Shown here: in pieces, positions 21,845 to 22,408 of the stretch
Layout of the letters: each line of letters begins with the position of its first letter
Numbering within the stretch: the stretch's first letter is position 1
IMG/VR virus record: IMGVR_UViG_3300003322_000571
Location: 186,001-250,000 of that record
Direction: 5' to 3' (one strand)
Length of the DNA stretch: 64,000 nucleotides
Notes under the pieces: generated by a model
The model's database searches: none
What the model saw: the letters and a program-made list of their open reading frames with translations, nothing else
What the model was told of the DNA's origin: nothing
Program-made: the position numbers and the translations under genes

Positions 21845-22408
21845 CTATTCATGTAAAAAGTCATTGATATCAAGACCGTACGCAAATGAGTCAACGTCGT
21901 GAACGCCAATAACGTACAAGACGTACGAAGACACGCTACTACCACGACCAACACCCCATACGGATTTGTTAGCAGTTAGTGTATTTATGATCCAAATTAT
22001 CGCTCGCAAAACGTCGAAAAGACCACGAGATTTGTAAGCTGCAATTTCTTCCAGCAATCTGTAGTCGCGTTTTTCGATTTCTTCGGCGGACAAATCTACG
22101 GTTAGTTTGATGTGTTTATCAAACAAGTATTCGACGATGTCGAGATACTTATATTCGTCCGGAAATGTCCATTGCTTTGATAATGGACGACATTGAGTTT
22201 TGACCTCAATTTTCTTATCTTGAGGTGCAAACTTATTGTAGTTGCGAACGTCCGGTGTCATTTCGTCAACGTACCGGACGTCATATTGATTCATATAGCG
22301 CAGCAATTTGGCTGGGTCAAACGATGAATCGCCGTCAAACCACAGCCGGCGGTCTTTCAATTCAGTACTACGCAAACGAGCTTTGGTAATTTCCACGTGA
22401 GGTATCAA
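21845..22408 (-). CDS. dnaE: DNA polymerase III alpha (DnaE)-like fragment, N-terminal half of the catalytic core
   Basis: C-terminus YRLLEEI...VWGVGRGSSVSSYVLYVIGVHDVDSFAYGLDINDFL matches DnaE RL..E...[24 protein letters not shown].FERFL. Confidence 0.8.
   Translation of the reverse strand: MIPHVEITKARLRSTELKDRRLWFDGDSSFDPAKLLRYMNQYDVRYVDEMTPDVRNYNKFAPQDKKIEVKTQCRPLSKQWTFPDEYKYLDIVEYLFDKHIKLTVDLSAEEIEKRDYRLLEEIAAYKSRGLFDVLRAIIWIINTLTANKSVWGVGRGSSVSSYVLYVIGVHDVDSFAYGLDINDFLHE

What the first reader, a model, noticed from the sequence alone, without database searches (positions are those of the whole stretch)
21845..22408. N-terminal half of the split DnaE core with a non-DnaE N-terminal domain
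Seen: the last ~90 aa carry the DnaE RL..E...GRGS...Y..G...D...Y.L....FL segment, and the protein stops at INDFLHE, where DnaE continues FERFLNPER-x-PDxD. The two conserved Arg of FERFLNPER are not evident, and the first ~100 aa show no PHP motifs. The gene has its own RBS and sits among replication genes (uvsW, groES, clamp loader). Inference: this is a stable, selected gene fission with altered nucleotide-binding residues, not decay.
Basis: partly seen in the sequence, partly recalled or inferred. Interest (0 to 1): 0.7.

Follow-up and report, generated by a model that had tools for sequence, protein, structure and literature searches.

The report
Split mini DnaE polymerase, N-terminal subunit
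This gene encodes the N-terminal subunit of a two-piece, stripped-down relative of the bacterial replicative polymerase DnaE; it is kept under strong selection in a soil jumbo phage, but the split enzyme family was already described in 2021, so this copy is an ordinary new member.

Summary
The ORF is real, but it most likely starts at GTG 22396 (183 aa), not TTG 22408. Residues 73-183 are the first half of the DnaE palm (E. coli 275-394; Z 13.5), with an invariant GRGS motif. The protein ends inside the FERFLNPER motif: INDFLHE aligns with FERFLNP. The partner gene (10224-10799) starts MDIDIDF, the catalytic Asp strand. The N-side break holds to within a few residues in 149 distantly related clusters, and all 10 phage genomes tested carry both halves, 4-224 kb apart. 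dN/dS against the closest relative is 0.066. A complex prediction scores 0.90 (best control 0.34) and pairs the GRGS strand with the DIDID strand. Arg390 is Asp/Glu in 147 of 149 clusters, and Arg396 falls in the deleted stretch. Residues 1-72 are conserved, match neither PHP nor any solved fold, and lie in the predicted interface. No RBS of its own was found; the start overlaps the upstream ORF by 29 nt. It is not new: Iyer et al. 2021 (PMC7824862) described this split minimal Pol III alpha in group 2.2 jumbo phages. No biochemical study turned up in the searched library.

The parts
21845..22396 (-). N-terminal subunit gene of the split minimal Pol III alpha. 183 aa from GTG 22396; TAG stop at 21845-21847. 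The mechanical ORF extends to TTG 22408.
   Evidence: PF07733 E 4.5e-7 and phrog_11127 E 3e-37. Orthologues start with ATG at the position of GTG 22396. dN/dS 0.066. Independent soil-metagenome contigs span the stop with no indel.
22181..22396 (-). Residues 1-72: conserved N-terminal module that is not a DnaE domain (invariant R16, W19, D21, G22, N54, K66). Predicted extra interface to the C-half.
   Evidence: Alignment A1. Models with pLDDT 87-89. No PDB neighbour: Foldseek E>1, VIA wide Z<=2. No PHP match. Residues 11-24 contact C-half 26-31, 40-48 and 53-55 in the predicted complex. dN/dS 0.048.
21848..22180 (-). Residues 73-183: first half of the DnaE palm (E. coli 275-394), ending inside the FERFLNPER motif.
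   Evidence: VIA-align Z 13.5, rmsd 2.3 A, 108 residues, model 73..183 against 4jom/2hnh 275..394. hmmsearch maps 109-182 to E. coli 320-393.
21938..21949 (-). GRGS (G150-S153): the GS nucleotide-binding motif, equivalent to E. coli Arg362-Gly363-Ser364.
   Evidence: Invariant in A1. Exact GRGS in the 149 of 150 cluster representatives that are not truncated. Role of the motif taken from bioRxiv 10.64898/2026.06.29.735100.
21860..21862 (-). Asp179, at the position of E. coli Arg390, a dNTP-contacting residue.
   Evidence: Alignments. Asp (78) or Glu (69) in 147 of 149 clusters. R390A lowers catalytic efficiency 27-fold in E. coli according to the preprint read.
10224..10799 (-). C-terminal subunit gene (191 aa): second half of the palm plus shortened fingers, no thumb.
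   Evidence: PF17657 and phrog_11778 E 4e-67. Residues 59-159 map to Taq 609-722 and 162-178 to E. coli 752-768. It is the only copy in the genome.
10782..10796 (-). D2-I-D4-I-D6: the catalytic Asp strand, equivalent to E. coli Asp401/Asp403, directly after the initiator Met.
   Evidence: D2, D4 and D6 invariant in A2. MDIDID start in 103 of 120 homologues. In-frame TAA two codons upstream of the ATG.
10596..10604 (-). K66-I-D68 of FKIDFLHL, equivalent to E. coli Lys553/Asp555 (third catalytic Asp).
   Evidence: K66 and D68 invariant. Aligned to KMDFLGL of Taq Pol III alpha.
22368..22778 (-). Upstream 136-aa Pro/Gln-rich ORF whose 3' end overlaps the N-half start by 29 nt; possible translational coupling.
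   Evidence: The same overlap occurs in L004 (29 nt) and L005 (32 nt).
21606..21836 (-). Downstream 76-aa basic protein gene; its AGGAG ribosome-binding site overlaps the N-half stop codon.
   Evidence: Conserved as 76 aa directly after the N-half in L004, L005 and L006.

Best explanation
The gene encodes the N-terminal subunit of a two-subunit, minimal DNA polymerase III alpha-like enzyme of a T4-related (group 2.2) jumbo phage.

Shown:
- Residues 73-183 are the first half of the DnaE palm, including the strand with the GS motif (R151-G152-S153).
- The separately encoded 191-aa partner starts with the next strand, which carries the metal-binding Asp pair (D2, D4). It goes on to the Lys/third-Asp strand (K66, D68), the template-contacting RPG motif and the KSH helix-loop-helix of the fingers.
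- Both proteins are conserved, co-inherited and under purifying selection.

Inferred:
- The halves assemble non-covalently so that the GS strand pairs with the DIDID strand and rebuilds the Pol-beta-like nucleotidyltransferase core.
- The lineage-specific N-terminal 72 residues add a second interface onto the C-half sheet, compensating for the broken chain.
- The heterodimer is catalytically active. It most likely acts as a distributive, template-dependent DNA polymerase alongside the phage's family B replicase in repair, gap filling or recombination-dependent synthesis.
- Its dNTP pocket is altered: Arg390 is replaced by Asp and Arg396 is lost. It has no thumb, PHP, clamp-binding or OB domain.
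For: - Family and fold: PF07733 and phrog_11127; structural alignment 73..183 to E. coli 275..394, Z 13.5.
- Partner: PF17657 and phrog_11778; catalytic and template-contact motifs invariant.
- Assembly: ipSAE 0.90/0.89/0.90 against a best control of 0.34. That mark was reached by 58 of 80 solved complexes and 2 of 110 mismatched pairs. Runs agree in >=96% of contacts and the partner's pLDDT is >=92. The lowest-error contacts are N146-148 with C5-8 and N18-22 with C44-46/53-54.
- Selection: dN/dS 0.066. In a soil variant, 3 of 5 substitutions are synonymous and 2 conservative.
- Breadth: 2713 N-half and 1811 C-half homologues of conserved length. There are 183 clusters at 50% identity with E<=1e-30, and none of the best 150 exceeds 205 aa.
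- Co-occurrence: one N-half in each of the 10 C-half-bearing phage genomes tested; one of each in this genome.
- Context: the genome also encodes a 948-aa-frame family B polymerase. The N-half sits between the helicase/UvsX/SSB genes and the clamp loader.
- Published description of the family: PMC7824862.
Against: - No biochemical or genetic data for any member were found in the searched library.
- The complex is a prediction made with my own unpaired alignments. Because the two chains are pieces of a fold that is solved as one chain, a high score may partly reflect memory of DnaE structures.
- Missing thumb, most of the index finger (E. coli ~657-752), Arg390 and Arg396 could mean weak or different activity. 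R390A alone costs 27-fold in E. coli.
- No RNA runs hold the sequence, so expression is unverified.
- The Mantel correlation between the two halves (r 0.93) shows co-inheritance only, as for any two vertically inherited genes.
Confidence: 0.75

Rival explanations
1. The heterodimer forms but is not a templated DNA polymerase. It would be a specialised nucleotidyltransferase, for example terminal transferase-like, primer-independent, or using ribo- or modified nucleotides.
For: - Arg390 is Asp/Glu in 147 of 149 clusters.
- Arg396 is deleted in this clade.
- The thumb and about 85 residues of the index finger, which in E. coli carries Arg709/Arg710/Lys714/Lys715, are absent.
- A complete family B replicase is already present.
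- Another nucleotidyltransferase and a MazG-like pyrophosphatase lie in the same block.
Against: - The template-contacting RPG motif (R135, P136 invariant) and the KSH helix-loop-helix (H171, Y175 invariant) are retained.
- The N-half sits next to helicase, recombinase, SSB and clamp-loader genes in distant relatives as well.
Confidence: 0.17
2. The ORF is a decaying remnant of a once full-length phage or host dnaE, and the similarity to DnaE is a fossil.
For: Only about a third of a DnaE is left in the genome. PHP and HhH domains are absent, and two dNTP-contacting arginines are gone.
Against: - dN/dS is 0.066.
- GRGS and other motifs are invariant across 149 clusters at <=50% identity.
- Length and ends are conserved.
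- The partner is always present.
- The stop codon is confirmed in independent metagenomes.
Confidence: 0.02
3. The two halves are joined after translation or transcription (split intein or trans-splicing) into one chain, as in cyanobacterial dnaE-n/dnaE-c.
For: Split-intein DnaE is known from cyanobacteria (established knowledge). Here both genes lie on the same strand, with the N-half first.
Against: - There is no room for intein halves. The N-half aligns with DnaE to its last residue (E. coli 394), and the C-half's second residue is the catalytic Asp401 equivalent.
- No nucleophile follows the Met; the residue there is Asp.
- The distance between the genes varies from 4 to 224 kb, and one close relative has them on opposite strands.
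Confidence: 0.01
4. The N-half acts on its own or with a host partner, for example binding host Pol III or RNA polymerase, rather than with the phage C-half.
For: - Sub-threshold Pfam RpoY (RNA polymerase epsilon) hits fall in residues ~17-60 of 10 of 51 homologues (best 21.4 bits among those inspected, cut-off 25).
- The N-terminal module evolves fast in distant relatives; profile matches there start at positions 33-106.
Against: - No structural match to RpoY or anything else.
- Strict co-occurrence with the C-half.
- The predicted interface uses the very strand that needs the DIDID strand to complete the sheet.
Confidence: 0.05

Closest known systems
Split minimal DNA polymerase III alpha of group 2.2 jumbo phages (Iyer, Anantharaman, Krishnan, Burroughs, Aravind 2021, Viruses 13:63, PMC7824862); PHROGs 11127 (N-half) and 11778 (C-half)
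   Same: - Two standalone proteins from distant genes: an N-terminal NTP-binding part and a C-terminal Mg- and template-binding part.
- No other DnaE domains.
- Accompanied by a family B polymerase, clamp loader, UvsW-type helicase and gp32-type SSB.
- Relatives include XacN1, Xoo-sp13, RsoM2USA, Atu_ph07, 121Q/GAP32 and PA5oct-like phages.
   Different: Nothing essential; this is an uncultured root/soil-metagenome member. Details added here:
- The exact mapping of the break (E. coli 394 | 400).
- The acidic residue at the Arg390 position.
- The C-half N-terminus trimmed to M-DIDID in this clade, whereas 121Q-like and Alishewanella phages keep an Arg-containing leader.
- The 72-aa N-terminal module in the predicted interface.
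- One member in a 141-kb, non-jumbo phage.
Bacterial DnaE (C-family replicative polymerase alpha subunit; E. coli 2HNH/5FKV, Taq 2HPI/3E0D)
   Same: Palm fold and motifs: the GS motif with the preceding Arg, three catalytic Asp, Lys553, RPG and the KSH helix-loop-helix.
   Different: - Two chains instead of one; about 374 aa in total against ~1160.
- No PHP, thumb, most of the index finger, beta-clamp-binding/HhH domain or OB domain.
- Arg390 replaced by Asp and Arg396 absent.
- An unrelated 72-aa N-terminal module.
Cyanobacterial split dnaE (dnaE-n/dnaE-c joined by a split intein)
   Same: A dnaE reading frame divided between two distant genes.
   Different: From established knowledge, the cyanobacterial break lies elsewhere in a full-length DnaE and is repaired by protein trans-splicing. 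Here there are no intein sequences and the break runs through the catalytic nucleotidyltransferase core.
Other split polymerases of jumbo phages, e.g. the chimallivirus split DNA polymerase (bioRxiv 10.64898/2026.09.30.755723, seen only as title and abstract)
   Same: A phage polymerase function distributed over separately encoded subunits.
   Different: Different phage group (nucleus-forming chimalliviruses) and different proteins. I did not read this paper beyond its abstract.

Membership tests
Split minimal Pol III alpha of group 2.2 jumbo phages (Iyer et al. 2021; phrog_11127 + phrog_11778) | Standalone N-terminal protein of ~170-190 aa carrying the NTP-binding (GS motif) part of the Pol III alpha palm | tested here: met
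   183 aa. phrog_11127 E 3.4e-37 covering 16-185 of the ORF against 3-170/171 of the profile. PF07733 above its cut-off. GRGS present.
Split minimal Pol III alpha of group 2.2 jumbo phages (Iyer et al. 2021; phrog_11127 + phrog_11778) | Separate C-terminal protein with the Mg-binding Asp residues and the template-binding finger part, encoded at a distant locus | tested here: met
   10224..10799, 191 aa. phrog_11778 E 4.3e-67 and PF17657. D2/D4/D68 invariant. It lies 11 kb from the N-half with more than 15 ORFs between them.
Split minimal Pol III alpha of group 2.2 jumbo phages (Iyer et al. 2021; phrog_11127 + phrog_11778) | No other DnaE domains in the genome; a family B polymerase and T4-type replication genes are present | tested here: met
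   - PF02811 and PF14579: no match at E<=10 in the complete 350-kb genome.
- PF00136 at E 1.7e-34 in a 948-aa frame.
- Clamp loader, helicase, UvsX-like recombinase and gp32-like SSB present.
Split minimal Pol III alpha of group 2.2 jumbo phages (Iyer et al. 2021; phrog_11127 + phrog_11778) | The two proteins reconstitute one active enzyme | tested here: inconclusive
   Prediction only: ipSAE 0.90 against a best control of 0.34. Binding and catalytic activity cannot be measured with these tools.
Bacterial DnaE (full-length C-family polymerase alpha subunit) | N-terminal PHP domain | tested here: not met
   No PF02811 match in the protein, in its 51 homologues or in the genome. Residues 1-72 have no PDB structural neighbour.
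Bacterial DnaE (full-length C-family polymerase alpha subunit) | Single chain with a contiguous palm-thumb-palm-fingers arrangement | tested here: not met
   - The chain ends at E. coli 394 and the partner starts at 400.
- The thumb (between DIDID and the HxxG strand) is reduced to ~25 residues.
- About 85 finger residues are missing.
Bacterial DnaE (full-length C-family polymerase alpha subunit) | Catalytic motifs: GS motif, Asp401/403/555, Lys553 | tested here: met
   Present and invariant, but spread over two proteins.
Bacterial DnaE (full-length C-family polymerase alpha subunit) | Arg390 and Arg396 of FERFLNPER lining the dNTP site | tested here: not met
   Asp179 aligns with Arg390, and the position is Asp/Glu in 147 of 149 clusters. 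Arg396 lies in the stretch missing between the two proteins.
Bacterial DnaE (full-length C-family polymerase alpha subunit) | Clamp-binding/HhH and OB domains | tested here: not met
   The C-half ends near E. coli ~780. PF14579 is absent from the genome. The OB domain was not searched separately.
Split-intein DnaE (cyanobacterial type) | N-intein at the end of the N-protein and C-intein plus a nucleophile at the start of the C-protein | tested here: not met
   Both proteins align with DnaE up to the break. The C-half begins Met-Asp, and no extra sequence is present.

The most novel reading that the evidence does not exclude
The enzyme would not be a back-up DNA polymerase. The family-wide swap of the dNTP-contacting Arg390 for Asp/Glu, the loss of Arg396 in this clade and the missing index-finger basic residues would have retuned the pocket for a different substrate or reaction. 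The fold-orphan 72-residue N-terminal module would be a purpose-built clasp that makes a catalytic core split through its central sheet viable. That would offer a natural model of how nucleotidyltransferase cores can be assembled from separate peptides.
Probability: 0.15. Interest if true: 0.6.

Novelty: new member of a known kind. Interest (0 to 1): 0.3.

Why it matters
The split minimal Pol III alpha is widespread. I found at least 183 clusters at 50% identity, and it occurs in cultured phages of E. coli, Klebsiella, Salmonella, Pseudomonas, Xanthomonas, Ralstonia, Agrobacterium and Sinorhizobium. I found no biochemical characterisation of it.

It is the smallest known C-family polymerase core, and it is cut through its catalytic sheet. 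An activity assay would therefore say what the minimal requirements of this polymerase family are. It would also bear on the proposal of Iyer et al. that the phage form resembles the ancestral enzyme, as opposed to a reduced one.

For this window the practical value is correct annotation:
- Two genes 11 kb apart encode one enzyme.
- The start codon is GTG 22396.
- The gene is intact, not a pseudogene.

Tried and rejected
1. PHP vestige in residues 1-72. No Pfam PHP hit in the protein, in 51 homologues or in the genome. No PDB sequence hit for the sub-alignment. A separate model (pLDDT 87) has no structural neighbour. Rejected as far as the tools can see.
2. RpoY (RNA polymerase epsilon) lead. 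Sub-threshold Pfam hits in 10 of 51 homologues, not backed by structure or PDB profile search. Left as unconfirmed.
3. ESM Atlas search on residues 1-73. It returned only the family itself.
4. Fused, unsplit mini-DnaE. None among the 150 best cluster representatives, which are all <=205 aa. Weaker hits were not listed, so distant fused forms are not excluded.
5. Intein or trans-splicing. Rejected on alignment ends and gene arrangement.
6. Own RBS. Not found.
7. Nucleotide search of the phage collection. No near match, so this phage is not among the cultured ones held there.
8. RNA evidence. No RNA run holds the sequence. Read laying gave contigs only, which confirm the stop codon but say nothing on expression.
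9. dN/dS against the 70-77% identical relative. Synonymous sites are saturated, so only the 96% orthologue gives a usable estimate.
10. Mantel test of the two halves (r 0.93). It shows co-inheritance, not interaction.

Full report
**Where the window lies.** The window is bases 186001-250000 of a complete 350,089-bp virus record with direct terminal repeats. The sequence is held by a root metagenome of 2016, and near-identical pieces occur in soil metagenomes of 2024. No cultured phage is near at the nucleotide level. By protein the nearest cultured relatives are Xanthomonas phages XacN1 and Xoo-sp13, Stenotrophomonas phages CM1 and RAS14, and Ralstonia phage RsoM2USA. Further out are Atu_ph07, the 121Q/GAP32 group and the PA5oct group.

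**The observation.** An open frame on the minus strand runs 21845..22408.
- Its C-terminal ~77 residues match Pfam DNA_pol3_alpha (profile 19-95 of 260, E 4.5e-7, above the curated cut-off). The whole protein matches phrog_11127, annotated "DNA polymerase", at E 3.4e-37.
- The ORF at 10224..10799 matches the Pol III finger family PF17657 and phrog_11778 (E 4.3e-67). It begins MDIDIDF.
- These are the only DnaE-like pieces in the genome. PHP and HhH domain models find nothing at E<=10.

- *The C-terminus.* INDFLHE is not followed by a missing FERFLNPER; it is the counterpart of FERFLNP.
  - phmmer aligns VWGVGRGSSVSSYVLYVIGVHDVDSFAYGLDINDFLH with [37 protein letters not shown] of M. tuberculosis DnaE1.
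  - A family profile aligns residues 109-182 with E. coli 320-393.
  - The AlphaFold model (pLDDT 89) superposes residues 73..183 on E. coli 275..394 with Z 13.5 and rmsd 2.3 A.
  - The C-half's Asp2 and Asp4 correspond to Asp401 and Asp403. Only about five residues (ERVSM) are therefore missing between the two proteins.
  - Arg390 is replaced by Asp179, and Arg396 lies in the missing stretch.
- *The start codon.* The likely start is GTG 22396.
  - The 96%-identical orthologue (L004) and the 70%-identical one (L005) have ATG at that position.
  - Homologues are 182-184 aa.
- *The RBS.* No Shine-Dalgarno-like motif precedes either candidate start.
  - About two thirds of this genome's long ORFs show AGGAG-like motifs at -12 to -7.
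  - The start overlaps the upstream 136-aa ORF by 29 nt. The same overlap occurs in relatives.
  - Translational coupling is therefore more likely than an RBS of its own.
- *The N-terminal part.* The part with no DnaE counterpart is 72 residues, not about 100.

**Is the fission stable and selected?**
- The word-indexed search found 2713 N-half and 1811 C-half homologues, nearly all 176-190 and 190-192 aa long.
- The exhaustive profile search found 1376 clusters at 50% identity with E<=0.001, 183 of them at E<=1e-30. None of the best 150 exceeds 205 aa.
- Of these 150, 149 carry GRGS exactly; the remaining one is a truncated fragment.
- In 136 of the 149 the C-terminus lies 33-38 residues after the G of GRGS. 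The Arg390 position is Asp or Glu in 147 of 149.
- All ten C-half-bearing phage genomes searched with the N-half profile hold exactly one N-half frame of 169-213 codons. Each match ends at profile position 178-182 of 183.
- The two genes lie 4 kb (RsoM2USA) to about 224 kb (Phosso) apart. In the closest long relative contig they are on opposite strands, 28 kb apart.
- The C-side end is less rigid:
  - M-DIDID in this clade and RsoM2USA;
  - MKNIPDIDID in Atu_ph07;
  - M..YRKARTDIDID in 121Q, GAP32 and XaC1;
  - MTHSVIERRTFDVDID in the Alishewanella phage.

  Some clades thus keep the "ER"/Arg of FLNPER on the C-half, and this clade has lost it.
- dN/dS against the 96%-identical orthologue is 0.066 (dS 0.33). 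It is 0.048 for residues 2-72 and 0.084 for residues 73-183, similar to the neighbouring 76-aa gene at 0.089.
- Independent soil contigs span the stop codon without indels.
- Decay is excluded.

**How it probably works.** The break runs through the Pol-beta-like nucleotidyltransferase core.
- The N-half contributes the helices and the strand carrying the GS motif.
- The C-half contributes the following motifs (residue roles from the preprint read):
  - the next strand, with the two metal-binding Asp;
  - the Lys66/Asp68 strand, equivalent to E. coli Lys553/Asp555;
  - the template-contacting RPG motif, equivalent to Arg639-Pro640-Gly641;
  - the KSH helix-loop-helix.
- The complex prediction scored ipSAE 0.90, 0.89 and 0.90 against a best control of 0.34.
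  - That mark was reached by 58 of 80 solved complexes and 2 of 110 mismatched pairs.
  - The runs agree in at least 96% of contacts, and the partner's pLDDT is at least 92.
- The lowest-error contacts are N146-148 (VWG, just before GRGS) with C5-8 (IDIF). This is the expected strand pairing.
- The other low-error contacts are N18-22 (LWFDG) with C44-46 and C53-54. The N-terminal module is therefore predicted to extend the interface.
- Two cautions apply. I supplied unpaired alignments, and a fold solved as one chain may be remembered by the model.

**The N-terminal module.**
- It is conserved within the clade, with R16, W19, D21, G22, N54 and K66 invariant.
- It is under purifying selection.
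- It diverges fast in distant relatives, and no solved structure resembles it.

**What the enzyme does.** The thumb is reduced to ~25 residues, and about 85 finger residues, the PHP domain and everything after E. coli ~780 are absent. With Arg390 turned acidic and Arg396 gone, the dNTP pocket differs from DnaE. In E. coli, R390A costs 27-fold in catalytic efficiency.

The genome also encodes a family B polymerase in a 948-codon frame. The N-half lies in a block with an SSB, a UvsX-like recombinase, a UvsY-like protein, a nucleotidyltransferase, an SF2 helicase, a GroES-like protein and clamp-loader subunits. The N-half/chaperonin/clamp-loader order recurs in a PA5oct-like phage, and the helicase/N-half/clamp-loader order recurs in XacN1.

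I therefore favour an active accessory polymerase working beside the B-family replicase, as Iyer et al. suggested. A non-templated or otherwise specialised transferase remains a rival at roughly one chance in six.

**Comparison with what is known.** Iyer et al. [quoted passage not shown] They proposed that the halves reconstitute the enzyme.

The window's genes meet every testable feature of that family. PHROGs already holds both halves as families. I found no experimental paper on them. They are not members of full-length DnaE, since PHP, a single chain, Arg390/396 and the C-terminal domains are all absent. They are also unlike the intein-split cyanobacterial dnaE.

**Verdict.** This is a new, uncultured member.
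- the residue-level map of the break;
- the family-wide acidic residue at the Arg390 position;
- the clade-specific trimming of the C-half N-terminus;
- the fold-orphan N-terminal module placed in the predicted interface;
- the presence of the system in a 141-kb phage that is not jumbo.

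Noticed in passing
window 9248..9763 (+); L010 2081-2434 (-), L011 2048-2407 (-), L008 4039-4557 (-): A small protein of unknown function (phrog_11637, no Pfam match) is a convergent neighbour of the C-half gene in this phage, its close relative, E. coli phage 121Q and Agrobacterium phage Atu_ph07. In the window a 153-aa ORF (9740..10201) lies between them. Microsynteny conserved this deeply could mean a functional link to the C-half.
   Followed up: partly
window 22368..22778 (-): A 136-aa Pro/Gln-rich ORF with no family match overlaps the N-half start by 29 nt. 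Its C-terminal tail (..TPDIDTSRGNYQSSFA) is similar in XacN1 ORF246 (..IDTSKGYSGSFD), which suggests a conserved terminal peptide motif.
   Followed up: partly
window 21606..21836 (-): A 76-aa protein that is strongly basic with an acidic C-terminal tail. It is conserved at exactly 76 aa directly after the N-half in three relatives. Its AGGAG ribosome-binding site overlaps the N-half TAG stop. The only family hits are faint (ATP-cone E 0.05).
   Followed up: no
window 21007..21600 (-): The 'GroES' gene is a 197-aa two-part protein. Residues 2-93 match phrog_931 (head morphogenesis) and residues 106-191 match Cpn10/GroES, so it looks like a tandem of two co-chaperonin-like domains.
   Followed up: no
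window 10800..10830 (-): The C-half ATG has no Shine-Dalgarno motif. A TATAAT hexamer ends 6 nt upstream of the ATG, and an in-frame TAA lies two codons upstream. A very short or absent leader is conceivable, but the hexamer is not conserved in L008 or RsoM2USA.
   Followed up: partly
L012/L017 (Alishewanella phage vB_AspM_Slicko01, OQ508956.1): Both halves of the split polymerase occur in a 141-kb phage, so the system is not confined to genomes over 200 kb. Its C-half keeps an 'ERR' before the DVDID motif, the most DnaE-like version of the break seen here.
   Followed up: partly
L011 1501-1566 (Atu_ph07, NC_042013.1 gp074): The RefSeq CDS for the Atu_ph07 C-half starts at an internal Met and omits the catalytic DIDID strand. 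The open frame begins MKNIPDIDIDF about 22 codons upstream.
   Followed up: partly
window 25950..27032 (-) and 16730..17671 (-): A 360-aa nucleotidyltransferase (phrog_388; its homologue in L005 carries the Pfam family RlaP) and a MazG-like pyrophosphatase (phrog_1247) sit in the same replication block as the N-half.
   Followed up: no
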